This document shows positions 3,580-48,648 of a DNA stretch of 48,648 nucleotides, one piece after another. The DNA is from Octopus bimaculoides (Eukaryota), in NCBI RefSeq assembly GCF_001194135.2, contig NC_068981.1:93903013-93951660 (forward strand), read 5' to 3'. How positions within the stretch are numbered: position 1 is the first letter of the stretch; each line of letters opens with the position of its first letter. The notes beneath the pieces are model-generated. The model saw only the letters and a list, made by a program, of their open reading frames with translations, searched no databases and had not been told where the DNA came from. A program made the translations under genes and the position numbers.

Positions 3580-5560
3580 TTCACATATTTGTGTTGTCCA
3601 CTGCACATCAAATAATTTGCAATGAATACAAAGTAACGGAAGTATATTCGATTTGGATTCGTGTCCCTCCAAAGGAGAGACACAGATGTCCCCCAGACTG
3701 TCACAGAAGTCCCCGCAGACTGTCACAGAATTCCCCGCAGACTGTCACAGAAGTCCCCCAGACTGTCACAGAAGTCCCCCAGAGTGTCACAGAAGTCCCC
3801 CAGACTCACAGAATTCCCCCAGAGTGTGGTATGTTACAAAACTTTGAGCAATGATGGAATGTGACCCTCACGCTTGGAACGCTATTTAAGGACAACACAT
3901 CCTGTTCTTGCAGGCAAACCCAAAGCATTCTTTGAAACAAAAAGACATTCCTTGAAGCAAGCTGAGTTGGACGGTAGTGGGGTATTTCGGCAGCAAACTT
4001 CAATAGTTGTTGAGGCTTCCTATGAGATCATCATGTTGATTGCAAAGAGCAAGGAGAGTCATAACATCGGAGCGTCTCTCATAAAACCAAATCTACTCCG
4101 TGCAGCAGAACTCGTTCTGGAGAAAGATAGTGCAAACAAGCTTTTCCTGGTCTCCCTATCAAACGATACGGTCAATGGAAGGATCGACGAATTGTTTCAA
4201 GACGTCAAAGATCAAATTCTCAACAAAGTGAGAGATTCTCCTGTTTTTGCCATCCAGTGTGACGAAATTACTGATATCGCTCAGTATTCCCAGCTACTGG
4301 TATCTGCTCGTTTTGTCTCAGGAAACTATATAAAAGAGGAAACGTTCTGTCACCTATTTTTCATGATGTATCAAACTTCTTTCAGGAAATCCAACTTTCG
4401 TGGGATTCGCTAGTAGGAGTGTGCGCTGTTGGAGTTCCAGCCATGCTTGGTCTGCAGTTTGGATTCATTACTGGGGTGAAAGAAAAAATTCCATCTGTTG
4501 TTGGTACACACTGCATATTTCATCATGAAGCCACAGCATCCAGAACCTTATCTACTGAAATGAGAAATGTCTTGAACGTGGCTATCAAGGTTATCAACTT
4601 TATTAAAGGTGGAGCCTTCAACAGTCGTCTTTTCAAACTGTTGTGTAAAGATATGGAATCTGAACATGAAGCATTGCTTTTTCACACGAACATACGATGG
4701 CAATCAAAGAGGAACAAGCTTGGACGGCTTTATGAACGACGAGAAGTAGCAATATTTCTAGATTTGTAGCAGAAGGCAAATCTCCATGACAAGTTCCAGT
4801 CTGAAGGCTTTCAGCTATCTCTAGCTTACCTGGAGGACATCTTCGAAACGTTGAATACTCTCGACCTTAAACTACAAGGGAAAAACATCAACATTCTCAC
4901 GCACCACGACACCTTTCGAACTTTCATGGACAAACTCGACCTCTGAAAATGTCGAATTCAGTAGGGAAATACAGCCAGTTTTAGTTACTTGATTCAGCGT
5001 TAAAGANNNNNNNNNNAATGTCGAATTCAGTAGGGAAATACAGCCAGTTTTAGTTACTTGATTCAGCGTTAAAGAAACAATAATCACTCATCTGACTTGA
5101 AAACAGAATTCATCAGATACTTCCCAGATACAGATGAAAAGTGTGAAGCTTGGAAATTCATCAGGGACCCATTTCAGTGTGAAGTGACTGACGTTTTGGA
5201 TGACGTGCAAGAGGAGTTTCTTGAGCTGAAGTTCAACTCCCCATCTAAGGAAGACTTCAAAGAACTGGATCTTGAAGCGTTCTGGATCACCCTCTGGTAT
5301 CACATCAGGCTCTTCGGATTTTAGCTATGTTTGGATCCATGTATCTTCGTGAAGCTGCATTTTCCACGCTCGTTGCTGTCAAGACCAAGTACAGAAACAA
5401 GCTGAACGTTGAAAGGAACTTACATTGTGCACTCCTTGGCATTCAACCACGCATTCAAGATCTTGTAGCTAAGAAGCAGTGTCAAATATCTCACTAATAA
5501 TGTGACTAATTCATATTGATTAAAAAAAGAATGGTGTGGATTCAAAGTGTCGATGTATAA
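3580..5560 (+). mobile_element. hAT DNA transposon, Buster/ZBED5-8-like, pseudogenised transposase (~3820-5497)
   Basis: BED finger (CVVCYKTLSNDGM...ERYL..TH), SLSNDTV, FAIQCDE.TD, C..H motif (HCIFHHE), LLFHTNIRWQS and C-terminal KTKYRNKLNV. Several stops and frameshifts are present. Element ends are approximate. Confidence 0.9.
3688..3825 (+). repeat. 20-21 bp minisatellite (cccagactgtcacagaagtcc), about 6 copies
   Basis: Tandem units are directly visible. Confidence 0.9.
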
Positions 5561-32809: not shown

Positions 32810-33865
32810 TTTTTTTTTCCAGAATCTTCCAGATGTATATTACTGCATACCTCTCTCGCCTTCTCTCCAAGGAGTAGAGTCTTAGCTGTTTCAGCTTTTC
32901 CCAGTAGCTGAGCAGTTGCAAAGAGACGATCTTTTTTGTGAATCTTCTCTGGGTTGCTTCAAGGTCCGCTGTTAATTTCACACTGGTGGGTGACCATAGC
33001 TGTGAGTAGTAATCCAGGCGGCTGAGGACGAATGTCCTCCAGAGGACCATCATGGTTTCCTTATCTCTGGTTCTGAATGTTCTCAGGATTCAACCAGTCA
33101 GTCGTCTGCACTTTGTCACCATCCTGGTAATGTACACTTGGAAAGAGGTATCATCGCTCATGTCGATATCCAGGTCCCTTACTGATTTAGGCTCTGGATT
33201 TGAAATTCCCTGTGGACCAGTGTACTCTGTAAGTTTCATATTCAGTTTTGGACGCTGGTAGCACAGGGCTTGGAATTTTTCAGCATTAAACTGCATATTA
33301 TTATCTTCAGCCCATCTGTAAATTGAGTCCAACTCCTGCTGCAGGTGTGCAACATCGCTGGGGTTCTGTATTTTCTGCGAGACTTTCGTATCGTCAGCGT
33401 AGCTTGCAAGGGTGGCTATCCGGGCACTTGAGGGCATATCTGAGAAGGCCGCTATAAAAAGCAGTGGTCCCAAGACAGTGCCCTGTAGAACACCGCTCAC
33501 TATTTGTGTTTTCATAGAGGTGGCTCCATTAGCTACTACTGCCTGACTTCTATCTTTCAGAAAGTCATGTAACCACTCTCCAAGTTTTCCAGCTATGCCG
33601 AGATCACGCAGTTTGTGGCATATCATACCATGATCCACTTTGTCAAAAGCTTTTGCAAAATCAAGGTATATTACGTCCACATTTGAGTTGTTGAGTAACT
33701 GTCTCAACACCCAGTCATAATGTTGTAAGAGCTGGGTCAGGCAGCTCCTACCTAGTCGAAAGCCATGTTGGGTATCACTCACCAAGTTATTTTCTTCAAG
33801 GAATGCGATGAGTTTCCCTCTGACTATCCGTTCCATGACTTTGCTGATGTGTGAAGTCAGAGAGT
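32810..33865 (-). mobile_element. CR1/L2-type LINE reverse transcriptase fragment, 5'-truncated
   Basis: QHGFRLGRSCLTQLL, VDVIYLDFAKAFDKVDH, GVLQGTVLGPLLF, YADDTK and SLERRR motifs. Confidence 0.9.
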
Positions 33866-34500: not shown

Positions 34501-34756
34501 AACTGGGCTATCCTTCGTTTTGAGTCACAGTGTTGTCAATGATCTATCAGCTAAGGTACAGCGTTCGGTAAATTCCGTAAAAAATTTTTTTTTGTTTTTT
34601 TGAACTGGAAATGAACATTTTGTTTGATGTCAGCATAAAGTGAAAGAGACATGTGTATATGTTGATGGTGAGGTGCGAGATAGAAAGTGTGTGTATGTGT
34701 GTGTGTGTGAGAGAGAGAGAGAAGGTGTGTGTTGATGTGTTTGGGAGAGAGAGAGA

Positions 34757-34837
<81 letters not shown>

Positions 34838-35236
34838 NNNNNNNNNNNNNNNNNNNNNNNNNNNNNNNNNNNNNNNNNNNNNNNNNNNNNNNNNNNNNNN
34901 NNNNNNNNNNNNNNNNNNNNNNNNNNNNNNNNNNNNNNNNNNNNNNNNNNNNNNNNNNNNNNNNNNNNNNNNNNNNNNNNNNNNNNNNNNNNNNNNNNNN
35001 NNNNNNNNNNNNNNNNNNNNNNNNNNNNNNNNNNNNNNNNNNNNNNNNNNNNNNNNNNNNNNNNNNNNNNNTCTCTCACACACACACACACTCTCTCTCT
35101 CAGTCAATCATTCACCCCAAAAAGATGCGAGGAAAAATAAATTAAAAAACGTACGCTGTCACTCTCTCTCTCTCCCACACACATCAACACACACCTTCTC
35201 TCTCTCTCTCTCTCCCACACACATCAACACACACCT

Positions 35237-35268
<32 letters not shown>

Positions 35269-35483
35269 ACACACACTTTCTATCTCGCACCCCACCAACA
35301 TATACACATGTCCCTTTCATTTTCTCTCTCTATCACTCTATGCTGACATCAAACAAAATGTTCATTTCCAGTTCAAAAACAACAAATAAAATTTGTTTAC
35401 AGAATTTACCGAACGCTGTACTTTAACAGCTGATAGATCATTGACAACTCTGTGATTCAAAACGAAACGAAGGATAGCCGGTT
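34501..35483. repeat. Local inverted duplication around a (GA)/(GT) microsatellite and N gap
   Basis: ~34501-34830 is the reverse complement of ~35160-35483, e.g. gaactggaaatgaacattttgtttgatgtcagcata. The arms differ by substitutions and indels. Confidence 0.8.
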
Positions 35484-35989
35484 GTGTCTGTTCTCACCTA
35501 CAGCCTTCCTGGGATACAGATTTTATTGATTCGTCGCAAGTTTGAGCCAATATAGAAAACTTAGTGTGGAGAGATAAATAGTGCAACATAAAGAAACTGA
35601 TTCAGTTTACCAAAATTTAATATATTATGAATTTCACGTTCAGAAGGAGCATTGAGCGATGGATGCAAGTAGAATGTTTACCTTACGCGTGAGCAATCAT
35701 ACATTTTGAAGAAAAAATAGGTTAAATTCCCAACCTTTTCAGTTCGTTTTTCGCTGTATCCAGTGTACTTTTTATAGTTACCTTATATATATAGAGAGAG
35801 AGAGGTATATATATAGTCTTCAAGTAAAGTGAAAGCTAAATTTTATTGCTGTTTTTTTTTTTCTGCTAGAAATAAATTTGAAAGTAAATCCTTATATTTA
35901 TTTTGAAAATAATTTTCTTTATCAAAAAGTTTCAATCAAGACATAAATACAATAACTGTATCACTTTTAATTAATTCCTTTATTTAGTT

Positions 35990-36060: not shown

Positions 36061-36156
36061 ATGCCGAGAGTACGTTATCCTCTTAAACCTTGGTTAATTC
36101 AATACATCTTAAACGATGATAATCGTAAATCAGCTCAGACTTTACAAGTACTTCAG
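36061..36156 (+). CDS. ACD: TPP1/ACD-like shelterin protein, coding exon 1
   Basis: MPRVRYPLKPWLIQYILNDDNRKSAQTLQVLQ resembles human TPP1 LRPWIRELILGS...GQLLEVLQ. The donor is CAG|gtttgt, phase 0. Confidence 0.75.
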
Positions 36157-36624
36157 GTTTGTGCCATTTGTCTTCCCCCGTTACAATGAGCATTACAGTA
36201 GGGATGAACTATGTATTGTCTGATCATTGAAATTGACTTTTGTTTCATAAATAGAGAGATATAACGTAAAATTTGTAGAACTAAAGGAGTTTGCCATACA
36301 ACGTTATTTTCAATAATTCATTTTTTAAAAATACTATATTGATTACAAAAAAAACAAATGATATTGATTAGAATTTCATGTTAATCGAATATAACGAAAT
36401 TGTTGACATTAGTTTCCCCTCTTAAATTGAAACTAATGTCAACAAGAAAAATACATTTCAATTATTGAAATGTATTTTTTTTCGAAGATAATTTGGTCAA
36501 ACTAAAGCGGTATCTACATCATCAATAACATGATATAGTATTTAATTCAAAATCCTTTTAGTTTTATATATTCCCACTTTGATCCAGTCCAGTTGTTTAT
36601 AAAATTATATATAATATTCAACAG

Positions 36625-36722
36625 CATTGTGATGGCCCACTGGATGATGGCACCATGGTTATGATTGTCGGAGACGGAAAAACTCTTATGAAAGCCTATT
36701 TTCCTAAGACTGCTTATGAAAA
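36625..36722 (+). CDS. ACD: TPP1/ACD-like, coding exon 2
   Basis: caacag|HCDGPLDDGTMVMIVGDGKTLMKAYFPKTAYE+AA|gtaagg, phase 0 to 2. Resembles TPP1 LLVSDGTHSVRCLVTREA. Confidence 0.75.
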
Positions 36723-36780
36723 GTAAGGTTATTTTCATTTCTTGTACTTTTTTCGTGTGCGCCAATTATTTGTTAACTTT

Positions 36781-37227
36781 GTATCTGTCTGTCTGCCTGT
36801 TGCTGGCCTGTCGATTCTTTGGCTACTGACAGCTAATACCATGACTGGCCGGAGCGAGCTATATGTCTGTCTCTCTCTCTCTCTATCTATCTATTACTCG
36901 AAATTTCGCGCGTCCGCGCTAGCTAGTCGTGAGTAGAAAACATAAATTTAATATAAAAACATATTTCCTGAAATTGCAAATTATTTAAAATATAAAAATA
37001 TAATTTTCAACAGAGAATTTATCAAAATAGAAAACAAATGAAGTTTGAAGTTTAAAAATAATAGGATCGACCACTCACGACTAGCTAGCGCGGACGCGCG
37101 AACTTTCGAGTAATAGATAGATAGATAGAGAGACAGACAGACAGACATATAGCTCGCTCCGGCCAGTCATGGTATTAGCTGTCAGTAGCCAAAGAATCAA
37201 CAGGCATACAGGCAGACAGAGAGATAC
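36781..37227. repeat. CpG-rich inverted repeat in intron 2 (arms ~155 bp, AT-rich spacer ~138 bp)
   Basis: 36781-36934 is the near-perfect reverse complement of 37073-37227. Confidence 0.9.
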
Positions 37228-38905
37228 TTCACTAGCAGTGAGCACTTTCACTTCTGACAGCTAATAGCTTGATCTACTTGCCAGCTGACAAGAAAGTATC
37301 TAAACGTTGTCGTTGGACCTGCGAGAAATAGCAGGCAATTTCCCTTTCAAATCACACTCAACTGTCTTAAAATAAACGGAAAGACACATTGGGTAATGTT
37401 GTCCTAGATACACTGTGTCTGAAGAAAAACAAATGTTAGGATGCTTTTCATGAAATACCTTTTTGATGAAAGATCACAAAAATACGAGTCAATATGGTCA
37501 TGGCTGGAACGCCTCTCAGAACTGATCCAGGGTTAGCACTAGCTTACATAGGGATTTTTTTATTTTTTTATTTTATCTGCCCAGAGAAATCCTTACACCA
37601 GTCACGAACAAACTGCATCTCTCAGGACTTTCAAAATGGCATACCTAAGCTTGTTCAATACAGTTGTACATCCTATTAGAATTAGCAACTAAATCTAATT
37701 GTGTTGGACGGTTTGACTAGAGCTGGTATGCCCGCGGGCCACACCAAGCGCCATTGTTCTAGCATGGATTCTACAACCGGATGCCCTTCCTGATGTCAAC
37801 CATTCCACAGAGTGTACTGGGCGCTTTTTCTATGTCACCAGCACTAGTCTAAATTCTGCTGTGGTTTCAGGCAGCATTCGGGCTGGCTCCTGTGGAGGGC
37901 ACCTTTGAGGCCTTCACGATCCATTTTCCATGTTTCTATTTTTTTTTTTTTTTCATTTTATTCTGACGATGAAAGTTTGCGACACTTTCACAAAGTTATA
38001 TGTGCTTCCAAACTCACTGCAGTAATTAATTCACTTCATACTTTTAGACTTGAACCTCCATTCGTACTAAGCAAGTGAAATGTATGACTATCACAACTAT
38101 CATAATGTTTCCATCACTTCACCATTTCCGAAAAAATATTAAAATGGGATTGAGATAAAATGAATAGGATCCATTTCATCTCAATCTCATTCTATCTTCT
38201 GTTACAAATTTTTAGTGGGATACTGTAACTGGAACAAGAAGATTTTAGTTTTCCACCTAGACATAAGTTTCATAAACTGCAAAATATTAATATCCACACT
38301 ACCACACCTGAAACATACCTGCTGTAACTCTTTATCTCGATTTGAATGTACGTGAAGGTATTTAAGAATACTCAAATTTATTTCTGCAAATGTGTTAAGC
38401 ACCAATGCTGATCATAGTTTAATTAATAAACATAGGAGCGAGGTAAATGCAGTAAAAATAGGAGGTCAGTGGGGCCCATTTAAGCTGCCCTTCAGAAATT
38501 GAACCTCCTTATGATACTCCCTGGGAGTTCATGGTATGAAATCCATTGTCATTGCTCCAATTTGGTTGCCAATGCTATGTATTTAGTTTTAAATGCAGTA
38601 AAAATAGTGGGGGGTGGGTTAGTAGAGCCCCAACTAGGCGGCCCTTAAAAAAATAGATCCCCTTAGGACATTCCCTGGGATTAGGGAAGTTGTTAGTTTG
38701 AGTTTTGTTGTCTTTGCACCAACAGTCTAGGAGGAGTTAACAAGCATAAAAACGTAACGGACAGAAACACCACTCAAATTTCTTTAAATAAATATATATA
38801 TATATACACAGATATAGCGTAAAATTAATAATTAATAATTTTACCAAGTAGTTTGGTATGTTAAAAGAACCATTATTGGTAAACTTATACAGAAGTTTTA
38901 TAATT

Positions 38906-39759
38906 ATAAGCATAATTATAATTCAGGTTCAGCAAAAATTGCTTCACTACATACCGAAATTTAGAAATACCAGTTAAAACACTATTCCACTACCATAATA
39001 TAACTCCCAGATTCACATAAGCAAAGAGAAAAAATAACAAATCCACCCGGCTTTGATTAACTGTGTACGCATTTCAGGATTAAAGAGATGTAAAAATATA
39101 TTACTCACTCACTTCTATCATCAGCACAGTATTTCAAATTATAAATCCGTGAATGCTAATTATTAAGAATATGCATTTAACCAAGCGCCATCGAACATTA
39201 TTTATACTTGTATAGATTGTAATATTCACAGATGGCATAAGTTGAGCAGTTTGATGGGATCTGTGAGCCAGAAGACTGTGAGTTTCATTGTCTTTGGTAT
39301 AGCTTCTACTGCTAGATGTCCTTCCAAATCACTTTACAGAGTGTACTAAGTGCTTTTTTTTTTTCAGTATTTCAAATTATAAATCAGAAAATGCAATTAA
39401 GAATATTCTTACAATATTTACAATATTCTTACTATTAAGAATATGCATTCGACCAAGCCCCATGGTGCTTGGTCGAATGTATATTCTTAATAATTAGCAT
39501 TCTCGGATTTATAATTTGAAATACTGTGCTGATGATAGAGGTGAGTAATATATTTTTACATCTCTTTAATCCTGAAACACGTACACAGTTAATCAAAGCT
39601 GGGTGGATTCGTTATTTTTTCCTCTTTGCCTATGTAAGTTGCGAGTGCTGCTGTCTGGGAGTTATATTATGGTAGCAGAATAGTGTTTTAACTGCTATTT
39701 CTAAATTTCGGTATGTGGTGAAGCAATTTTTGCTGAACCCTAATTATAATTATGCTTAT
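38906..39759. repeat. Inverted repeat with HHR-like motifs in both arms (probably PLE-terminus derived)
   Basis: 38906-39186 matches the reverse complement of 39467-39759. CUGAUGA...GAAA.cg.UA with acugug/cacagu stem I occurs at 39060-39130 (-) and 39523-39589 (+). Confidence 0.8.
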
Positions 39760-40324
39760 GTATATATATATATATATCCCTATAACTAAAACACAAAAAA
39801 TCTCTCAAATATCANNNNNNNNNNNNNNNNNNNNNNNNNNNNNNNNNNNNNNNNNNNNNNNNNNNNNNNNNNNNNNNNNNNNNNNNNNNNNNNNNNNNNN
39901 NNNNNNNNNNNNNNNNNNNNNNNNNNNNNNNNNNNNNNNNNNNNNNNNNNNNNNNNNNNNNNNNNNNNNNNNNNNNNNNNNNNNNNNNNNNNNNNNNNNN
40001 NNNNNNNNNNNNNNNNNNNNNNNNNNNNNNNNNNNNNNNNNNNNNNNNNNNNNNNNNNNNNNNNNNNNNNNNNNNNNNNNNNNNNNNNNNNNNNNNNNNN
40101 NNNNNNNNNNNNNNNNNNNNNNNNNNNNNNNNNNNNNNNNNNNNNNNNNNNNNNNNNNNNNNNNNNNNNNNNNNNNNNNNNNNNNNNNNNNNNNNNNNNN
40201 NNNNNNNNNNNNNNNNNNNNNNNNNNNATATTTAATCCTTTATATTGAACATTCAATATTTCATCTATTCAATAAGACATATTCCATATATTCAATAAGA
40301 CATTCAATACTTTATTTCATTGTA

Positions 40325-40490
40325 CCACTCTCTGAGTGGTTGGCGTTAGGAAGGGCATCCAGCTGTAGAAACTCTGCCAAATCAGACTGGAGCCTGGTGT
40401 TGCCATCCGGTTTCACCAGTCCTCAGTCAAATCGTCCAACCCATGCTAGCATGGAAAGCGGACGTTAAACGATGATGATGATGATGATGA
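40325..40490 (+). mobile_element. SINE family E 3' part with (GAT)n tail
   Basis: gttggcgttaggaagggcatccagctgtagaaac...ggacgttaaacgatgatgat. Near-identical to copies at 46340-46503 and 48373-48540. Confidence 0.8.
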
Positions 40491-40659
40491 TTGTATATTC
40501 CATATTCTATATCCCACATTGGTTTTGCAGGAATATAAATAAAACATAAAAAACAGAAGGGATCGTGAGCCAGAGGTCTGAGTTTCATTGTACTCCTCAG
40601 CTGCATAATGGAATTTCATTTTAGAAAGTCATTTTGTAGATATGTGCAAAAACAAGAGT

Positions 40660-41760
40660 AGGAGAAGAAGAAGAAAATACCATCTTGACTGGGCTGCCAA
40701 TCAACAGTCTAGTGAATCAAACAAGAATTTAATTTCTATATATTCTAATTGGAGGGGTAAGATAGCAGTAATTTCATTTTAGAGGAAGGTAGATTAAGTA
40801 GTAATGGACAGCAGGTTAGGGGTAAATCAAGCAAGAGAAAGAAAAAAAAGAAGAAAAAAAAAGATAAGAAAAAAGGAAAAAATATATATAGAAATAAAAT
40901 GAAAATGGAAGGACAATACCCTAAGGAGTGGCTAGAGGAAATTTAAGGTAAGGGAATTTAGGTCAAGATATTGAAGAATTAAGAATATATCTATTCCTCA
41001 GTATATTTAGAATAATATAACAAAACACTAAAGTTCTAAATTTAAAACCATAGGGAACATTAATAGTTAAATTAGAACAAGACAAACATTTATAGTTAGA
41101 ATAAGATATGCATTAATGTGGGGTAGTAGAAGAGAGATATTATTTATAAGTAAAACCATAATATTAATGGCCAAAACCAGAACAAAGAGAAAGGAGGAGG
41201 AATAAAGTTAGAAAATCAGGACTAAACTAAGAGAATTAAAGCTAAGGTTTCAGAATTGATAATATGGTAGAAGAGACTTAGAATTAGCTAGAGAAATGTA
41301 GAATTAGCTAGAGAAATGTGGGTTGGGAAAGGTTAAAATGTATTCTAAATTTATACTTTAAAGCTATAACTCAAATAAAGTAGTTAATAGTCAGGGAAAC
41401 AAGAGGAATTAAAATAATATATTATTAGCAAGATTTACTTTTTAAAATATTTAAAGGTACGAGAGTAACAATATACACATAGAACCCTAAGGTCAGATCT
41501 ATTGTTAATTAGATTAGGATTATCTTTAAGTTTAAAAATTTCATAAATTTCCATAGAGCACAGTCCACATCCGTATCTACTATTTCTATAGGGTTGTGCT
41601 CTCTTGACGATTTCCCATTTAAGGTTAAAATCGATACCATTTTCTTTCAATTCCCAAATTTTATTAGATAATGATGTGCTATTGTTTAAGTCTAAACGAG
41701 GAAAAATGATTGTATAATCGCTGTTTAAGATTGATTTACCCTCTCTCATCACCTTGATTT
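40660..41760 (-). mobile_element. Penelope-like element 3' fragment in TPP1 intron 2, antisense to the gene
   Basis: STSLSNKIWELKENGIDFNLKWEIVKRAQPY...CGLCSMEIYEIFK...LINNRSDL is the PLE GIY-YIG C-terminus, followed by a pyrimidine-rich UTR. The left boundary is uncertain. Confidence 0.75.
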
Positions 41761-42342
41761 AAATAATCACACTCTCTTTCCTAATCTTCTTCAGTTATAA
41801 AAGACCCTTTAGTCTTGTAAGTTGCAAAGTGAACTCACTAATGGTAGTGCTATGAAAACACTCTATAAAGGGGTTGGCATTAAAAAAGAGTATCCAGTTG
41901 TAGAAATCATACCAAAACAGACACAGAAGGATGATGTGGACCTCCAACTCTTTGTATCCTGCCAAATTGTCCAACCCATACCAGCTTGGAAAGATGACAT
42001 TAAATGATGGTAAGAATGGCAACTCACCACTACGACCATCACAAAGACAGGATATTCACAGTTGGAATGCCTCTGACCATAGGTCTACTAGATGAGGACT
42101 GATGTGAGAGGCTAAACAGCAACAACAACATTTTATTTGCTGCTATATGTACTGAGCCATAAAATTCACATACTGTAACATTACAAATACTGGTTGGTAA
42201 ACTTAGTCATATACAAAGGTTACACACCTTTAATATATACCCAGTCAACTGCGACTCTGTATTTTAAAGAGTATGTTGAATCAAGTTGATTCTCATCTTT
42301 CGTTTTAATTCATTTCCCTTTTAAACATATATATTTATTTAG

Positions 42343-42430
42343 CCTTGAAGGTTTCCAACGGGAATGCTGGCAACGATCCCTTATAAAAGTCACTGATTGG
42401 AATATGTTACTAATGTTAATGGATACTAAA
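42343..42430 (+). CDS. ACD: TPP1/ACD-like, coding exon 3
   Basis: ttatttag|C+LEGFQRECWQRSLIKVTDWNMLLMLMDTK|gtgagt, phase 2 to 0 and in frame with exon 2. Confidence 0.7.
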
Positions 42431-44276
42431 GTGAGTACTTAGTATTATTTATATTTGTATAGATTGTAATATTCACAGATTGCAGTTCTCAAAATCATTT
42501 AATGTTCATCATCCATGCTGGCATGAGTTGAGCAGTTTGATGGGATCTGTGAGCCAGAAGACTGTGAGTTTCATTGTCTTTGATATAGCTTCTACTGCTA
42601 GATGTCCTTCCAAACCACTTTACAGAGTGTACTAAGTGCTTTTTTTTTCATGACAAAGAAGAAGACCCCTCAACTTGGGGTTTTAGTAGAGAGGGATATG
42701 ATTTTATGCTTATTGTTGAGAGATTATATAAGGGTGGGTGTGAGTAGCTTGAAAGAAGACTGATGTAGTTACAAGATATTTGAGTGTATTCTCAAGATAT
42801 AAAAGGTGAGTGTGAGAGATAACACAAACAAAGGATTGGGAAGTTCACTGGAGTGTGAGTGGAAAGTGACTGATGGTTATAGATAGAATGTTGAATGTAA
42901 TGAAAGGAACAAGGTTGAAGGTAAATATTAGTATGAGTGGTGGGGAGAAATAAGAGTGGCTAAGGAAGGAAGAAGTGATAAGTGGCAGTGCAGGAGATGA
43001 GGCCATTGATAGCAGATGTGAGAGTGTTGAGAATGATAGCAGATCATGATCCATATTGCTTATTCTAGACCCAGCAGATATTCTTGGATGTTCCACTTAT
43101 GACTTGACCATCTTGAACCACATTATTCAATTGTCCTACTTTTTTTCAAGACAGTGGAGCATGGTTTGATAGAGATTTGCGTATTTCTCCAGCAAGCTGA
43201 ACAACCACATAGAGGTTTCCTAACTGATTTTGAATGTGAAGCATTTGCAAAAGCTGGAAGGAAATGAGGCAAGCATACTCTGATAGGTGTGTAATATTAG
43301 TGTTCATGAACAACAAAGCACAAAGGAACTAAGTAAAAAGTATAAGAGGAAGCAGATGTAGTGTGCTGAGAGAAGATTGCACTAATAAAGATGATGACAG
43401 TTGTGTAAAGTGCTAAGCAGTCTGATTGGAAGCAACATGTGGAAGTGGAAGTGAAAGCTAAAAATGCCAAAGATCTGCAGCAATAAATGGCAAAACACTG
43501 CAGTGAAGAAGACATTCATAGCAAGCTTGTAAAAACAAATGCAAAATGATGATGATGATATTGAGTTACAATCTACTCCATAGTGTTGCAATGATATTGT
43601 AATACTTAAGCAGTCATTTTCTTCTGGTGGACTCTGTCATTCAATGATTGTGTAGCATATTAAGTGACCAATATAAGACATGATAATACTTCAAATATAG
43701 AAAGGGTGTGATGGGGGTGGTCAAAACAGTAGAGAATGAAACTAAATACTTTTCCGTATTTAGTTTTATATCTTGTTCTGACTATATTTGACTTTTTATC
43801 TTTTGATGCTGTGTACTAATAATGTTCTGGGGCCTATACAATTTACAATATTCTTTCATCTAAAAAAATTTGGGCTTGTGGAAAATAAAAAAAAGTATCA
43901 GTCCTGCCACCACCATTTGACAACTGGTGTTGGTGTGGTTGCATCCTTGTAACTTAGCAGTTCAGCCAAAGAGACTTAGAATAAGTATCAGGCTTTAAAA
44001 CAAAAAGTACTGGAGTCAATTCATTCAACTAAAATATCAAGGCGGTGCCCCAGCATGACCACAGTCTAATGACTGAAGCATTTTCATGTTTGTTGTAAAC
44101 ATCCATGCTTGTTTTTAGGCTTTTAGCTAGCCCTCGTTTGATACGTTCTGAATAATAAAAAGCTTTCCTGTCATAAGTTCCAAGTTACTTTGGTGGCTGA
44201 ATAAAAAAACTGGGACTATACATCATGTGATGCATGGACAATAGGGAAATATGTCCTGTGTATCACTTGACTGGAG

Positions 44277-44657
44277 TGGAGGCGCAATGGCCCAGTGGTT
44301 AGGGCAGCGGACTCGCGGTAATAGGATCGCGGTTTCGATTCCCAGACCAGGCGTTGTGGGTGTTTATTGAGCGAAAACACCTAAAGCTCCACGAGGCTCC
44401 GACATGGGATGGTGGCGAACCCTGCTGTACTCTTCCACCACAACTTTCTCTCACTCTATCTTCCTGTTTCTGTTGTACCTGTATTTCAAAGGGTCAGCCT
44501 TGTCACACTGTGTCATGCTGAATATCCCCGAGAACTATGTTAAGGGTACACGTGTCTGTGGAGTGCTCAGCCACTTGCACGTTAATTTCACGAGCAGGCT
44601 GTTCCGTTGATTGGATCAACTGGAAGCCTCGACGTTGTAAGCGACGGAGTGCCAACA
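44277..44657 (+). mobile_element. tRNA-derived SINE, family B
   Basis: A-box (tggcccagtgg) and B-box-like (ggtttcgattccc) head. An inverted homolog lies at 13563-13939. Confidence 0.85.
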
Positions 44658-44799
44658 CATCACTTGACTGGCAAAGATTAAATCTAAAAGGAATTACTAT
44701 GTGAAATGTGTAAGCAATATAGTTTGAATTATATGACAACTTGTAAAGTTTTGCTTCAGCAGTTAGCAATGTTAATTCTTTCTTTTTTCTCTTTATTAG

Positions 44800-44888
44800 G
44801 AGAAATCAGATTATGGGATCACAATAAAAGCTTTTGATGTTTGGAACAATGAAGAAGGGCTCTCGCATAAAAAAAGGCAGACGCCATG
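44800..44888 (+). CDS. ACD: TPP1/ACD-like, coding exon 4 (gene continues; next exon not resolved)
   Basis: Long polypyrimidine tract ending ttattag|EKSDYGITIKAFDVWNNEEGLSHKKRQTP+TG|gtaaat, phase 0 to 2. Aligns with TPP1 AEFYLQVDRFSLLPTEQ. Confidence 0.7.
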
Positions 44889-45589
44889 GTAAATCAATAA
44901 CTTCCTTTCAAGATTTTCAAATACAAAATATTGTACATAAGAATTTAACTAATATCTACTGCCCTGCAGTTATCAGCCATTTATTTCTACTTGTTGAATA
45001 TAGTATTCAGTGCAGAGACCATTGAAAAGATAACTGAAGATAATCTGTTGAGAGTGGTGGGGATATTAGTCAATGATTGATAACATTTTAACATTTTAAT
45101 TTTAATTACTTTAGGAAATATGGGAGGCAACTCAAGACATGTTTCATTCTTATTAAAGTCTCATTGGAAAGCATGGATGTTGCTGTACTTTCTGAAGTAG
45201 TGAGGGGAGAATCATAAAGTAAAAGCTTGTATGCTGGTTAGTGTAAAGAATAAATAATAGAGATGTGATCCTCGTGAAAAAACAGTGTTTAAGTTAGTGG
45301 TAACATATTTAATGTACCCTTAAAAAGGTAACTAAAAATAAAATAATTGTGCAATAAGGAGGAAAAACTTTAGTTAATAATCGATATATTCTTGAAAATT
45401 CTTTGTAATATTTTGATGGAGTAAACATTTCAATTATTAGTTTACATTCACCTTCGACATTTCAACTTTGTTAAAAGCTACATGTAAGGTCACAATAGTA
45501 ATGGCAAAATGTATTACAAATTAATCAGTTGCACTTGTAAGGAAATTGCCAATGAATGCTGATTGAGCCTTACTTAATATATACACTCT

Positions 45590-45716
45590 ACCAGATATGT
45601 TCAACCAATCTCTTTTGCTGAACTGCTAAGTTATGGGGACACAAACACACCCACATCGGTTGTCAAGCGATGGGAGGGGGACAAACTGACACAAGGACAC
45701 ACGAACATTTATACAT

Positions 45717-45748
<32 letters not shown>

Positions 45749-45935
45749 TTGTGTGTGTGTGTGTGTGTATATATATATGTGACGGGCTTCTTACAGTTTC
45801 TGTCTACCAAATCCACTCACAAGACTTTGATTGACCTGAGGCTATAGTAGAAGGCACTTGGCCGGGGTGCCACACACTGGGACTGAAACTGGAACCATGT
45901 GGTTGGAGAGCGGGCTTCTTACCACACAGCCACTT
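45590..45935 (-). mobile_element. Family A SINE with internal microsatellite
   Basis: Same head-microsatellite-tail layout as 23570-23970. Confidence 0.75.
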
Positions 45936-45974
45936 CTTTATATATATTGAGTAAATTGGACACTAAACTCCACT

Positions 45975-46503
45975 TGCTAAGACCTGTTGAGGCAAGTGAA
46001 ATCGAAATCGAGTTAAATTCGACGACTGGCACCCATGCCAATGTCATCTCCTTCATTGGANNNNNNNNNNCGAGTTAAATTCGACGACTGGCACCCATGC
46101 CAATGTCATCTCCTTCATTGGACATGAAACTCAGCTTGCGAAGACTTATTGGGGCAAGCGAAAGCGAAATCGTGATGTCACTTGTGCCCATGGCATGTGT
46201 AAGGACTTTCGAGAGAGATCGTTGCCAGTTCCCCTGGACTGGCTCTTGTGCAGGTGGCACATAAAATACACCATTTTGAGCATGGCCGTTGCCAGTACCG
46301 CCTGACTGGCCTTCGTGCCGGTGGCACGTAAAAGCACCCACTACACTCTCTGAGTGGTTGGCGTTAGGAAGGGCATCCAGCTGTAGAAACTCTGCCAAAT
46401 CAGATTGGAGCCTGGTATAGCCATCCGGTTTCACCAGTCCTTAGTCAAATCGTCCAACCCATGCTAGAATGGAAAGCGGACGTTAAACGATGATGATGAT
46501 GAT
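45975..46503 (+). mobile_element. SINE family E, long copy
   Basis: Reverse complement of 47789-48283, with a (GAT)n tail. Confidence 0.8.
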
Positions 46504-47788
46504 AGCAAGGAGACAAACCAGGAACCCTACAATATATGAGGAATATCTTACATAGAATCATGTTGAAACTCCCTAACATGTACTATATCCCTGGTTTAGA
46601 ATTAAAAATGAAGATACAGTAGACATCAGTGTGCAGGTGGTAGAGCTACAACATAATTATATTCTAATAACTAACTAAAAAGTGAAGATATAAATCATTA
46701 TGCATCATCATCATCGTTAAAGCTGCTTATTTATTAGTTTGGAGTATGTAACTTTTACTAAAAGAATGCAGTTATTAAAGTCTGCACTTTCTAGAAAATT
46801 CTAATTTTAATATATTTTTATCAAAGTGTAGTTTTAGCTTCCTTTTATTATTAAAAATTTCAACTATAGAAAACTAATTTTAATTCATTGCAAGATAGCA
46901 TTTTTTAACACTGATTTCATTCCATCTTTGTCTTCTCTCTCTCTCTCTCTCTCCCTCTCTCTCCACCTCTCTCTCTCCACCTCTCCCTCTTTTTCTCTCT
47001 CACCAGCACTGATACCATTTCTGCTGTGGCAGATGGGTCTTCTTTAGTACAGCAATGCACCAGATATCTCAATATTTAGTCATCTCCTTCATAAGGCTCA
47101 GTTTTCAATAGTTCATCCCATGTTTTCCTGGGTCCCTCTCTCCCACATGTTCCATCCACTTTAAATGATCCAGCACTTCTGAAAAATTACACAAACATGT
47201 CTTGAGTTGCCTTCCTTTTGGAATTTAAATCTTTTTTTTTTTTTTACTTCTTTTAGTTATTAGACTATGGCCATGCTAGGGCACCACCTTAAAGAATTTT
47301 AGCCAAACGAATTGACCTCGGTACTTTTTTTTTCTCTTTTTAAGACTGGTACTTATTCTATCAGTCTCTTTTGCCAAACTGCTAAGTTACACGGACTTAA
47401 GCACACCAACACCAAGCTGTCAAGTAGTGGTGGGGTACAAACAGACACAAAGACACACACACACATAGATATATGTATATAACAAGCTTCTTTCAGTTTC
47501 CATTTCCCAAATTCACTACCAATACTTTGGTCAGCCCAAACTATGTAGTTGGGAAACAAACTTCTTACCACACAACCTATATGAGTATTTTTTAATAAAA
47601 TGAAATTTTCCAGAGATGCCAACATAATTTGAAAAGGAAATATCAGTGGTAGATTTGTTGGTATGGCTGTTTCATGTGCTGTAGACCTTTGATTATAACC
47701 CTTTTGATTCCTTCTATTTCCATCATTCTAAATAACCATACAGAGGCTACTTTTTGAGTTTGTTTAAAAGAAAGAGATTAAGACTGCA

Positions 47789-48283
47789 ATCATCATCATC
47801 ATCATCATCATTTTACGTCCGCTTTCCATGCTAGCATGGGTTGGACGATTTGACTGAGGACTGGTGGAACCCGAAGGCTACACCAGGCTCCAATCTGATT
47901 TGGCAGAGTTTCTACGGCTGGATGCCCTTCCTAATGCCAACCACTCCGAGAGTGTAGTGGGTGCTTTTACGTGTCACCGGCACAAAGGCCAGTCAGGCGA
48001 TACTGGCAACGGCCACGCTCAAAATGGTGTATTTTATATGCCACCTGCACAAGAGCCAGTCCAGGGGCACTGGCAACGATCTCGCTCGAAAGTCTTACAT
48101 ATGCCACAGGCACAAGTGCCAGAAAGGCGACGCTGGGCACAGGTGCCATCCCGAATTCGCTTGCCCCAATAAGTCTTTGCAAGCTGAGTTTCATGTCCAA
48201 TGAAGGAGACGACGTTGGCATGGGTGCCAGTCGTCGAATTTAGTTCGGTTTCTATTTCACTTGCCTCAACAGGTCTTCGCAAT
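47789..48283 (-). mobile_element. SINE family E, long copy
   Basis: (CAT)n followed by ttttacgtccgctttccatgctagcatgggttggacg, matching 45975-46503 in inverted orientation. Confidence 0.8.
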
Positions 48284-48372
48284 AAAATAATGACAGAAAT
48301 ATTTAGTGAGCAAATAAAAGATACAAAGGAAAATTAGACATAACATATCAGAAAAGTTATACAGACTAGGAA

Positions 48373-48648
48373 TCATCATCATCATCATCATCGTTTAACG
48401 TCCGCTTTCCATGCTAGCATGGGTTGGACGATTTGACTGAGGACTGGTGAAACCGGATGGCAACACCAGGCTCCAATCTAATTTGGCAGAGTTTCTACAG
48501 CTGGATGCCCTTCCTAACGCCAACCACTCAGAGAGTGTAGTGGGTGCTTTTACGTGTCACCCACACGAAAACGGCCACGCTCGAAATGGTGTCTTTTATG
48601 TGCCACCCGCACAAGCCAGTCCAGAGGCACTGGCAACGATCTCGCTCG
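48373..48648 (-). mobile_element. SINE family E, runs off the window end
   Basis: Same sequence as the previous copy. Confidence 0.8.

What the first reader, a model, noticed from the sequence alone, without database searches (positions are those of the whole stretch)
36061..44888. Hidden TPP1/ACD (Est3-type OB-fold) gene absent from the ORF track
Four exons of 88-98 bp with canonical splice sites and matching phases (0, 2, 0, then 2) give ~123 aa resembling the TPP1 OB fold. Acidic residues at YENLEGF and VWNNEE fall where the human TEL patch (E169/E171, L212/E215) recruits telomerase. TPP1 diverges quickly and is often unannotated in invertebrates, so a cephalopod ortholog is informative for shelterin evolution.
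Basis: partly seen in the sequence, partly recalled or inferred. Interest (0 to 1): 0.7.

Follow-up and report, generated by a model that had tools for sequence, protein, structure and literature searches.

The report
Start of a TPP1/ACD telomere gene
Four small exons on the + strand most likely encode the first 123 residues of an invertebrate version of TPP1/ACD, the shelterin protein that recruits telomerase in mammals; this is an ordinary gene that prokaryote-style ORF listing misses, and only its first two exons are firmly identified.

Summary
Exons at 36061-36156, 36625-36722, 42343-42430 and 44800-44888 (+) have AG/GT borders and phases 0, 2, 0, 2. They splice to an open 123-aa product. 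The 413-N gap lies inside intron 2, so reading frame across it does not matter.

The exon pattern alone is not beyond chance: about 7% of random four-exon chains in this window stay open. Homology is what counts:
- Pfam's only hit is TPP1 (PF10341), E 0.027 and 14.7 bits, below the 26.5-bit cutoff.
- A TPP1 OB profile I built from 53 mostly vertebrate sequences gives 21.8 bits (E 5.5e-9). The best of 5000 decoy chains scores 8.9.
- hhalign gives 93% probability.
- Squirrel ACD has the same intron phases, at positions 0-3 codons away.

Exons 1-2 carry 17.1 of the 21.8 bits and are solid. Profile scores do not separate exons 3-4 from decoy exons. They are, however, the top pair of 3900 structure-compatible pairs on two separate criteria (chance about 7e-4).

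The TEL-patch claim is unproven. No exon 5 was found. Structure prediction, transcripts and the "unannotated" claim could not be tested. Verdict: a new member of a known family, of modest interest.

The parts
36061..36156 (+). Coding exon 1 (96 nt, ATG start, ends phase 0): MPRVRYPLKPWLIQYILNDDNRKSAQTLQVLQ. It covers the N-terminal helix and strand beta1 of the TPP1 OB fold (L-[KR]-P-W-[IL] motif).
   Evidence: Its open piece is the best six-frame hit in the whole window to both TPP1 OB profiles, matching profile positions 7-38. There is no in-frame ATG between the upstream stop at 35968 and this ATG.
36157..36624 (+). Intron 1 (468 nt, phase 0, GT..AG)
   Evidence: Squirrel ACD has a phase-0 intron 3 codons upstream in the alignment (LLK|VLQ against octopus-type VLQ|HCDG).
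36625..36722 (+). Coding exon 2 (98 nt, ends phase 2): HCDGPLDDGTMVMIVGDGKTLMKAYFPKTAYE(N). It covers strands beta2-beta3, with the [SG]DG motif.
   Evidence: It is the second-best six-frame hit in the window, matching profile positions 41-74. Exons 1+2 together score 17.1 bits on the diverse profile.
36723..42342 (+). Intron 2 (about 5.6 kb, phase 2). It contains the assembly gap 39815-40227, two large inverted repeats and SINE-like copies.
   Evidence: In squirrel ACD the matching intron is also phase 2 (TG|G in the Trp codon before EEKEFGF), 0-3 codons away depending on how the loop is aligned.
39815..40227 (.). Assembly gap (413 N), intronic
   Evidence: The profile alignment is continuous across the exon 2/3 junction.
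42343..42430 (+). Probable coding exon 3 (88 nt, phase 2 in, phase 0 out): (N)LEGFQRECWQRSLIKVTDWNMLLMLMDTK. It covers the acidic loop and strand beta4.
   Evidence: It ranks 2nd of 69 structure-compatible candidates by a crude splice score. Paired with exon 4 it ranks 1st of 3900 pairs both by splice score and by beta4-beta5 block score. It is not separated from decoys by HMM or Pfam score.
42431..44799 (+). Intron 3 (2369 nt, phase 0)
   Evidence: Squirrel ACD has a phase-0 intron one codon away in the alignment (AEGSS|PAEFY).
44800..44888 (+). Probable coding exon 4 (89 nt, phase 0 in, phase 2 out): EKSDYGITIKAFDVWNNEEGLSHKKRQTP plus a split TG. It covers strand beta5 (DYGITIKAFDV against vertebrate EFYLTVxxFxV).
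   Evidence: It ranks 1st of 94 candidates by splice score. It ends in CCA TG|, like the vertebrate P-x-Cys codon split TG|C by a phase-2 intron. The D84-to-F106 spacing across the exon 3/4 junction equals that in human TPP1 and in P0105.
44889..48648 (+). Start of intron 4. No further exon is recognisable before the window ends, and the stretch is mostly SINE-like repeats.

Best explanation
The region holds the 5' part of a protein-coding gene on the + strand that is the orthologue of TPP1/ACD, the shelterin subunit. Four short exons encode the start Met, the N-terminal helix and strands beta1-beta5 of its OB fold. The C-terminal helix of the OB fold and the rest of the protein lie beyond exon 4, probably outside the window.

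Shown here: the exons, their splice borders and phases; the profile-level similarity to TPP1, carried mainly by exons 1-2; and the agreement of intron phases and near-agreement of intron positions with a mammalian ACD gene.

Inferred from the family, not tested: the protein partners a POT1 orthologue at the telomeric single-stranded overhang and helps bring in or stimulate telomerase through its OB fold. Whether it uses a TEL-patch-like acidic surface is not established.
For: 1. TPP1 (PF10341) is the only Pfam family hit by the 123-aa product at E up to 10 (E 0.027, 14.7 bits; aa 21-85 on profile 32-104). The hit disappears when the exon order is permuted, when the sequence is reversed, and for each of the three fragments made of two adjacent exons.
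2. I built a profile from 53 TPP1 OB domains, mainly mammals and fishes. These came from a full HMMER search of 1.84 billion representative proteins with a mammalian alignment. The product scores 21.8 bits, E 5.5e-9 for one comparison, aligned over residues 6-107 to profile positions 7-121. The best of 3000 shuffles scores 6.5. The best of 5000 decoy spliced chains from the same window scores 8.9, and the four highest-scoring decoys, the only ones whose coordinates were checked, all contain exon 1.
3. They are adjacent, on the same strand and colinear with the profile. The best colinear chain sums to 18.2 bits, against at most 12.8 for 40 column-shuffled profiles and 10.6 for the reversed profile.
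4. hhalign against the diverse alignment gives probability 93%, E 3.5e-7, over 105 columns.
5. Gene structure: squirrel ACD (locus L001) has introns of phase 0, 2, 0, 2 at LLK|VLQ, SD(W)|EEKEF, AEGSS|PAEFY and VTG(C)|NQD. The octopus-type model has phases 0, 2, 0, 2. In the alignment, three introns lie 3, 0-3 and 1 codons from the squirrel positions. The fourth lies in a poorly aligned loop, in a split TG| codon after a Pro, as in vertebrates. Read-through ORF fragments from many vertebrates break at the same profile positions (34/35, 79/80, 110/111, 135).
6. The Met lies 10 residues before the conserved P-W, as Met87 does in human TPP1 (MAGSGRLVLRPW against MPRVRYPLKPW). The human sequence was verified against PDB 2I46/7QXA.
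7. For exons 3-4: 3900 candidate pairs obey the vertebrate phases and approximate lengths. The null rate of reaching 9.9 bits is 7e-4 per pair.
Against: - The Pfam score is below the gathering cutoff (14.7 against 26.5 bits).
- Exons 3-4 add only 4.7 bits to the custom profile score.
- Exon 3 ranks 48th of 733 in-phase candidates and exon 4 ranks 20th of 546.
- With a local sub-profile the real pair scores -1.5 bits, rank 57631 of 190282.
- Single-sequence queries give rank 178 (P0105) but no support from P0113 or human.
- Decoy third exons give Pfam TPP1 scores of 12.7-15.0 against 14.2 for the real one.
- My splice-site scoring matrix is crude and written from memory.
- No exon 5, POT1-binding or TIN2-binding part was found.
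- There are no transcript data, no orthologue from a related species and no structure prediction.
- No identical or similar protein was found in the 5.8-billion-protein collection. That collection is clearly thin for eukaryotes: it does not return full-length human ACD.
Confidence: 0.8

Rival explanations
1. Exons 1-2 are genuine TPP1 exons, but exon 3, exon 4 or both are mis-assigned. The true exons would lie elsewhere in the introns, or inside the 413-N gap, which is wide enough for an exon of about 90 nt.
For: Profile and Pfam scores do not separate the proposed exons 3-4 from decoys. The gap sits between exon 2 and exon 3.
Against: The proposed pair is first of 3900 structure-compatible pairs on two separate criteria, with chance about 7e-4. 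The conserved D-to-F spacing of beta4-beta5 is reproduced exactly across the proposed junction. Exon 4 ends in a Pro codon plus a split TG, as in vertebrates. No other downstream piece matches profile positions 75-130 better than noise.
Confidence: 0.12
2. The locus is a decayed or partial copy of a TPP1 gene (a pseudogene or a 5' fragment duplicated by the surrounding mobile elements) rather than the working gene.
For: The neighbourhood is dense with repeats, palindromes and retroelement fragments. No exon 5 is found in the 3.76 kb that follow. No transcript evidence is available.
Against: All four exons are open and all eight exon borders are canonical. The intron-containing structure matches the ancestral one, so it is not a processed copy. 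Introns of 2-6 kb are normal here, so a next exon lying beyond the window end is unremarkable.
Confidence: 0.08
3. The four 'exons' are chance open stretches in AT-rich repetitive DNA, and the resemblance to TPP1 is fortuitous.
For: Open AG..GT segments are abundant and about 7% of random four-chains stay open. The Pfam hit is below threshold.
Against: The product scores 21.8 bits against at most 8.9 for 5000 decoys and 6.5 for 3000 shuffles. Exons 1 and 2 are the top two of 2004 six-frame pieces and are colinear. hhalign gives 93%. Intron phases match ACD.
Confidence: 0.03

Closest known systems
Human TPP1/ACD OB fold (residues 90-250; PDB 2I46, 7QXA, 7TRE; Pfam PF10341)
   Same: - The same order of elements: Met, L-[KR]-P-W-[IL] helix, beta1 (QxLxVLQ), [SG]DG turn in beta2, beta3, acidic loop, beta4 (hydrophobic run ending in D-aromatic) and beta5 (acidic-aromatic-x-[IL]-T/Q-[IV]-x-x-F).
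- The same intron phases 0, 2, 0, 2 as a mammalian ACD gene.
- E112 aligns with TEL-patch E215, W109 with L212 and E72 with E171.
   Different: - About 20% identity only.
- The beta1-beta2 loop is much shorter, and there is a 4-residue deletion where human R180 lies.
- The loop after beta5 is 3-5 residues longer.
- Intron 1 lies 3 codons further downstream.
- The C-terminal helix of the fold, the POT1-binding domain and the TIN2-binding motif are not seen in the window.
- The Pfam score is under the cutoff.
Non-mammalian TPP1 proteins found (teleost-type P0104, P0109 and others; divergent P0105 of unknown taxon)
   Same: - The same OB-domain layout.
- An ungapped 45-residue alignment with P0105 across exons 3-4, with D and F anchors at the same spacing.
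- The ...T-P-C context at the end of exon 4 resembles fish ...TPCC.
   Different: Pairwise scores are all weak (phmmer at most 9.4 bits). The taxa of these proteins are not given by the tool, so none can be called a close relative.
Est3 (budding yeasts), TEBP-beta (Oxytricha), Tpz1 (fission yeast) and p50 (Tetrahymena), the wider TPP1-like OB group
   Same: From established knowledge, these share the TPP1-type OB fold and roles in telomerase recruitment or stimulation.
   Different: No sequence-level match to any of them was obtained here. The Pfam scan up to E 10 lists only TPP1, and phmmer against PDB lists none. The relation would need a structural comparison, which could not be run.

Membership tests
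TPP1/ACD (Pfam PF10341) | Match to the curated family profile at or above its gathering score | tested here: not met
   The product scores 14.7 bits, E 0.027, against a cutoff of 26.5, though TPP1 is the only family listed. The product covers only profile positions of about 32-104 of 158, because the exon for the last third of the domain was not found. A shortfall is therefore expected and does not exclude membership.
TPP1/ACD | Statistically significant homology to the TPP1 OB domain with an independent profile | tested here: met
   A custom 53-sequence profile gives 21.8 bits, E 5.5e-9 for one comparison. Decoys reach at most 8.9 bits and shuffles at most 6.5. hhalign gives 93%, E 3.5e-7. 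The signal is mainly in exons 1-2 (17.1 bits).
TPP1/ACD | Conserved gene structure of the OB-fold exons (intron positions and phases as in vertebrate ACD) | tested here: met
   Phases are 0, 2, 0, 2 in both. Positions lie within 3, 0-3 and 1 codons for introns 1-3. Intron 4 lies in a split TG| codon after Pro in both. Only one mammalian gene was mapped directly. Other vertebrates are inferred from the break points of read-through fragments.
TPP1/ACD | Three-dimensional OB fold resembling human TPP1 (2I46), Est3 or TEBP-beta | not testable with these tools
The pattern of hydrophobic strands is compatible with the fold, but that is not a test.
TPP1/ACD | POT1-binding (RD) helices downstream of the OB fold | not testable with these tools
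   No exon downstream of 44888 is recognisable in the remaining 3.76 kb. The gene presumably continues beyond the window.
TPP1/ACD | C-terminal TIN2-binding motif | not testable with these tools
   It lies outside the window. According to PMC8653790 this motif is absent from most invertebrate TPP1s anyway.
TPP1/ACD (mammalian functional subtype) | TEL patch (E168, E169, E171, R180, L183, L212, E215) for binding the TERT TEN domain | tested here: inconclusive
   In the alignments E112 pairs with E215, W109 with L212 and E72 with E171. E168 and E169 align with F69 and Q70. R180 lies in a 4-residue gap. The loop alignment is uncertain. PMC8653790 states that these residues are not conserved outside mammals.
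Expressed protein-coding gene | Transcripts that use the proposed splice junctions | not testable with these tools
   No transcriptome of the source organism is reachable. An exact-protein look-up of the exon 1 read-through ORF found nothing, and a metagenome scan found nothing.

The most novel reading that the evidence does not exclude
The most novel reading still open is that this mollusc-type TPP1 keeps a functional TEL-patch-like surface. It would consist of E72 and nearby acidic residues of the YENLEGFQRE loop, together with W109 and E112 after beta5, and would recruit telomerase. That would make the TPP1-TERT interface ancestral to bilaterians rather than a mammalian acquisition, contrary to the lack of residue conservation reported outside mammals.
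Probability: 0.1. Interest if true: 0.55.

Novelty: new member of a known kind. Interest (0 to 1): 0.3.

Why it matters
If the model is right, it gives the start and OB-fold exons of the TPP1/ACD gene of this animal. That is useful for correcting an annotation. It also adds a lophotrochozoan data point to comparisons of shelterin.

The intron phases of the OB-fold exons (0, 2, 0, 2) would then be shared between this invertebrate and mammals, so this exon structure would predate the protostome-deuterostome split. It also offers a construct for asking whether non-mammalian TPP1 proteins recruit telomerase through the same face of the OB fold. PMC8653790 names that question as open.

It does not change what is known about the family. 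TPP1 OB folds are already reported across metazoans.

Tried and rejected
I therefore did not submit it to the structure predictor, which states the same rule, and no fold search was run.
- Word-indexed homologue searches found nothing, with the 123-aa product or with a three-sequence alignment of the octopus-type product, P0105 and P0113. The human query returned only mammals. The collection is thin for eukaryotes, so these negatives say little about whether the gene is annotated.
- phmmer of the product against PDB gave only chance hits, such as AhpF.
- BLASTP against human TPP1 was not significant. hhalign against a mammals-only alignment gave 29% probability over exons 1-2 only.
- An exact look-up of the exon 1 read-through ORF and a metagenome scan with back-translated peptides found nothing.
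- Exon 5: the candidate at 45116-45201 adds nothing to the Pfam score and resembles an inverted copy near 47190. Profile and motif scans of 44889-48648 found nothing convincing, and the best hits lie in SINE-like copies.
- Attempts to validate exons 3-4 by local HMM, single-sequence or Pfam scores failed to separate them from decoys. I report this as a weakness rather than hide it.
- I considered an alternative exon 1 donor at 36147|36148 (CAA|GTACTT), which would match the mammalian intron position exactly. I rejected it because it removes the conserved VLQ of beta1.
- tRNA scan of the window: none.
- Literature search for TPP1, shelterin and octopus: nothing relevant.

Full report
**What is there**

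On the + strand there are four short segments: 36061-36156 (96 nt), 36625-36722 (98 nt), 42343-42430 (88 nt) and 44800-44888 (89 nt). The first starts at an ATG and the others follow an AG. All four are followed by GT (GTTTGT, GTAAGG, GTGAGT, GTAAAT). The acceptors of exons 3 and 4 follow T-rich tracts.

Joined, they give 371 nt with no stop and end phases 0, 2, 0, 2. The 123-aa product is MPRVRYPLKPWLIQYILNDDNRKSAQTLQVLQHCDGPLDDGTMVMIVGDGKTLMKAYFPKTAYENLEGFQRECWQRSLIKVTDWNMLLMLMDTKEKSDYGITIKAFDVWNNEEGLSHKKRQTP.

Each exon's frame is closed by stops within a few codons of its borders. The ATG at 36061 is the first in-frame ATG after a stop at 35968. In a prokaryote-style ORF list only exon 1 shows up, as a 42-aa ORF. 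That explains why the gene is missing from an ORF track.

**The gap**

The N run 39815-40227 lies wholly inside the 5.6-kb intron 2, more than 2 kb from either exon. Frame continuity across it therefore does not matter.

The profile alignment runs from exon 2 into exon 3 without skipping any profile column. The only deletion, of four residues, lies 12 residues inside exon 3. On the proposed model nothing coding is missing in the gap. Two things remain untested: whether the scaffold join is correct, and whether a different true exon 3 hides in the gap. The latter is kept as a rival.

**Is it more than chance?**

The exon pattern alone is not. The window has 1931 (+) and 2315 (-) open AG..GT segments of 80-105 nt, and about 7% of random ordered chains of four remain open. 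The case rests on homology.

- Pfam lists one family for the product at E up to 10. It is TPP1 (PF10341), E 0.027 and 14.7 bits, below the 26.5-bit cutoff, aligning aa 21-85 to profile 32-104 of 158.
- The hit vanishes for each of the three two-adjacent-exon fragments, for two permuted exon orders and for the reversed sequence.
- To get a sharper test I first confirmed the human TPP1 OB sequence against PDB 2I46/7QXA. I then collected mammalian homologues, aligned 15 of them and searched 1.84 billion representative proteins with that profile. This gave 98 TPP1 relatives, many of them of fish type.
- A profile of 53 OB domains from these scores the octopus-type product at 21.8 bits, E 5.5e-9 for a single comparison, aligned over residues 6-107.
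- Controls: 3000 shuffles reach at most 6.5 bits. 5000 decoy spliced chains from the window reach at most 8.9 bits. The four highest-scoring decoys, the only ones whose coordinates I checked, all contain a segment overlapping exon 1.
- hhalign against the same alignment gives 93% probability, E 3.5e-7, over 105 columns.
- An unbiased scan of 2004 six-frame open pieces puts the exon 1 and exon 2 pieces first and second (profile positions 7-38 and 41-74).
- The best colinear chain in the window sums to 18.2 bits. The 40 column-shuffled profiles reach at most 12.8, and the reversed profile reaches 10.6.

**Gene structure as independent evidence**

I fetched the squirrel ACD gene and mapped its exons. 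Its introns are:

| Intron | Squirrel ACD | Phase |
|---|---|---|
| 1 | LLK\|VLQ | 0 |
| 2 | SD(TG\|G)EEKEF | 2 |
| 3 | AEGSS\|PAEFY | 0 |
| 4 | VTG(TG\|C)NQD | 2 |

The model here has the same phase series. In the profile alignments its introns lie 3 codons (intron 1), 0-3 codons (intron 2, in a loop that cannot be aligned firmly) and 1 codon (intron 3) from the squirrel positions.

Exon 4 ends ...CCA TG|. That is a Pro codon followed by a split TGx codon, just as vertebrates have P-x-Cys with the Cys codon split TG|C.

Read-through ORF fragments from many vertebrates start and stop at the same profile positions, so the structure is general in vertebrates. The start Met also sits where the shorter human form starts (MAGSGRLVLRPW against MPRVRYPLKPW).

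**How firm is each exon?**

Exons 1-2 carry 17.1 of the 21.8 bits and are firm. Exons 3-4 are not validated by profile scores:

- They add only 4.3 and 0.4 bits.
- Among in-phase open candidates, exon 3 ranks 48th of 733 and exon 4 ranks 20th of 546. Glutamate-rich decoys do better.
- A local sub-profile gives the real pair -1.5 bits.
- Single-sequence queries give rank 178 of about 179,000 with P0105, but nothing with P0113 or human.
- In Pfam, decoy third exons give 12.7-15.0 bits against 14.2 for the real one.

Support for exons 3-4 comes from elsewhere. I imposed only what the vertebrate gene predicts:

- Exon 3: phase 2 in, phase 0 out, 79-109 nt.
- Exon 4: phase 0 in, phase 2 out, 62-92 nt.

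That leaves 69 and 94 candidates and 3900 ordered pairs.

It is also first by an ungapped 33-column beta4-beta5 block score. That score is 9.9 bits against 6.4 for the next pair, and the block spans the exon 3/4 junction.

Across 43,265 structure-compatible pairs on both strands of the window, only 7e-4 reach 9.9 bits. So the pair picked by splice signals has a block score with chance about 7e-4.

The block match is visible by eye: LIKVTDWNMLLML...SDYGITIKAFDV against IIILQDYxVxF...CEFYLTVxxFxV, with the D-to-F spacing identical to human and to P0105. I rate the four-exon model as probable, not proven.

**What it most likely does**

By family membership this is the shelterin subunit that binds POT1 and, through its OB fold, engages telomerase. 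None of this is tested here.

In the alignments E112 pairs with human E215, W109 with L212 and E72 with E171. E168 and E169 pair with F69 and Q70. The acidic residues of YENLEGF lie a few residues upstream, and R180 falls in a deletion. Myler et al. 2021 state two relevant points. The TPP1 OB fold is conserved in all metazoans, while the TEL-patch residues are not conserved outside mammals. How non-mammalian TPP1 recruits telomerase is open (PMC8653790).

**What is missing**

- No exon 5 (C-terminal helix of the OB fold) or later domain is recognisable in the 3.76 kb before the window ends. That stretch is mostly SINE-like repeats.
- No transcripts and no related genome were reachable.
- The claims that the source is a cephalopod and that the gene is unannotated could not be checked.
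- The same paper covers TPP1 orthologues of invertebrates and treats mollusks among its invertebrate clades, though it names them only for TRF in the passages I read.

**Verdict**

This is a real and ordinary feature: the 5' part of a TPP1/ACD orthologue, a new member of a known family. Confidence is about 0.8 overall, higher for exons 1-2 and lower for exons 3-4. Interest is modest. The conserved intron phases between this invertebrate and mammals, and a possible test case for telomerase recruitment outside mammals, are the useful points.

Noticed in passing
window 46009-46122: Two identical 52-nt copies (46009-46060 and 46071-46122) flank the 10-N gap at 46061-46070. This looks like two contig ends that overlap and were joined with a spacer instead of being merged, so it is an assembly artefact rather than biology.
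   Followed up: partly
window 34579-35397: A large imperfect palindrome surrounds the 234-N gap at 34838-35071. The arms, for example 34579-34649 against 35327-35397 (90% complementary), include (GA)n/(GT)n runs facing (TC)n/(AC)n runs. It lies about 0.7 kb upstream of exon 1. It could be a foldback element or a mis-assembly.
   Followed up: partly
window 36806-37205 and 38899-39766 (intron 2): Two long inverted repeats lie in intron 2: arms of 89 nt at 97% complementarity, and a nested set of 81-113-nt arms at 92-95%. The second ends about 50 nt before the 413-N gap. They are foldback or MITE-like elements, or assembly palindromes.
   Followed up: no
window 40318-40495 (+), 46336-46506 (+), 47790-48290 (-), 48373-48648 (-): Several copies of one SINE-like element carry a (GAT)n/(ATC)n tail (core ...GGTTGGCGTTAGGAAGGGCATCCAGCTGTAGAAACTCTGCCAAATCAG...). 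They sit in the introns of the gene and make up most of the sequence after exon 4. I saw this by reading the sequence. ORFs of 102-119 aa through them have no Pfam match.
   Followed up: no
window 33090-33836 (-): A 248-aa ORF matches reverse transcriptase RVT_1 (E 7.9e-23). It is a fragment of a non-LTR or retroelement copy about 2.2 kb upstream of exon 1.
   Followed up: partly
window 3874-4769 (+): Two adjacent ORFs of 179 and 116 aa look like a broken transposase-type gene when read by eye, but they have no Pfam hit at E up to 0.01.
   Followed up: partly
window 45116-45150 and about 47187-47215: A short stretch after a good-looking acceptor at 45115 (GGAGGCAACTCAAGACATGTTTC) recurs as its reverse complement near 47190. 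This suggests the ends of a mobile element rather than an exon. As an exon 5 candidate it adds nothing to the TPP1 score.
   Followed up: partly
window 44280-44360 (intron 3): A stretch resembling a tRNA-derived SINE head (GGCGCAATGGCCCAGTGGTTAGGGCAGCGGACTCGCGG...GGTTTCGATTCCC) is present. ARAGORN calls no tRNA anywhere in the window.
   Followed up: partly
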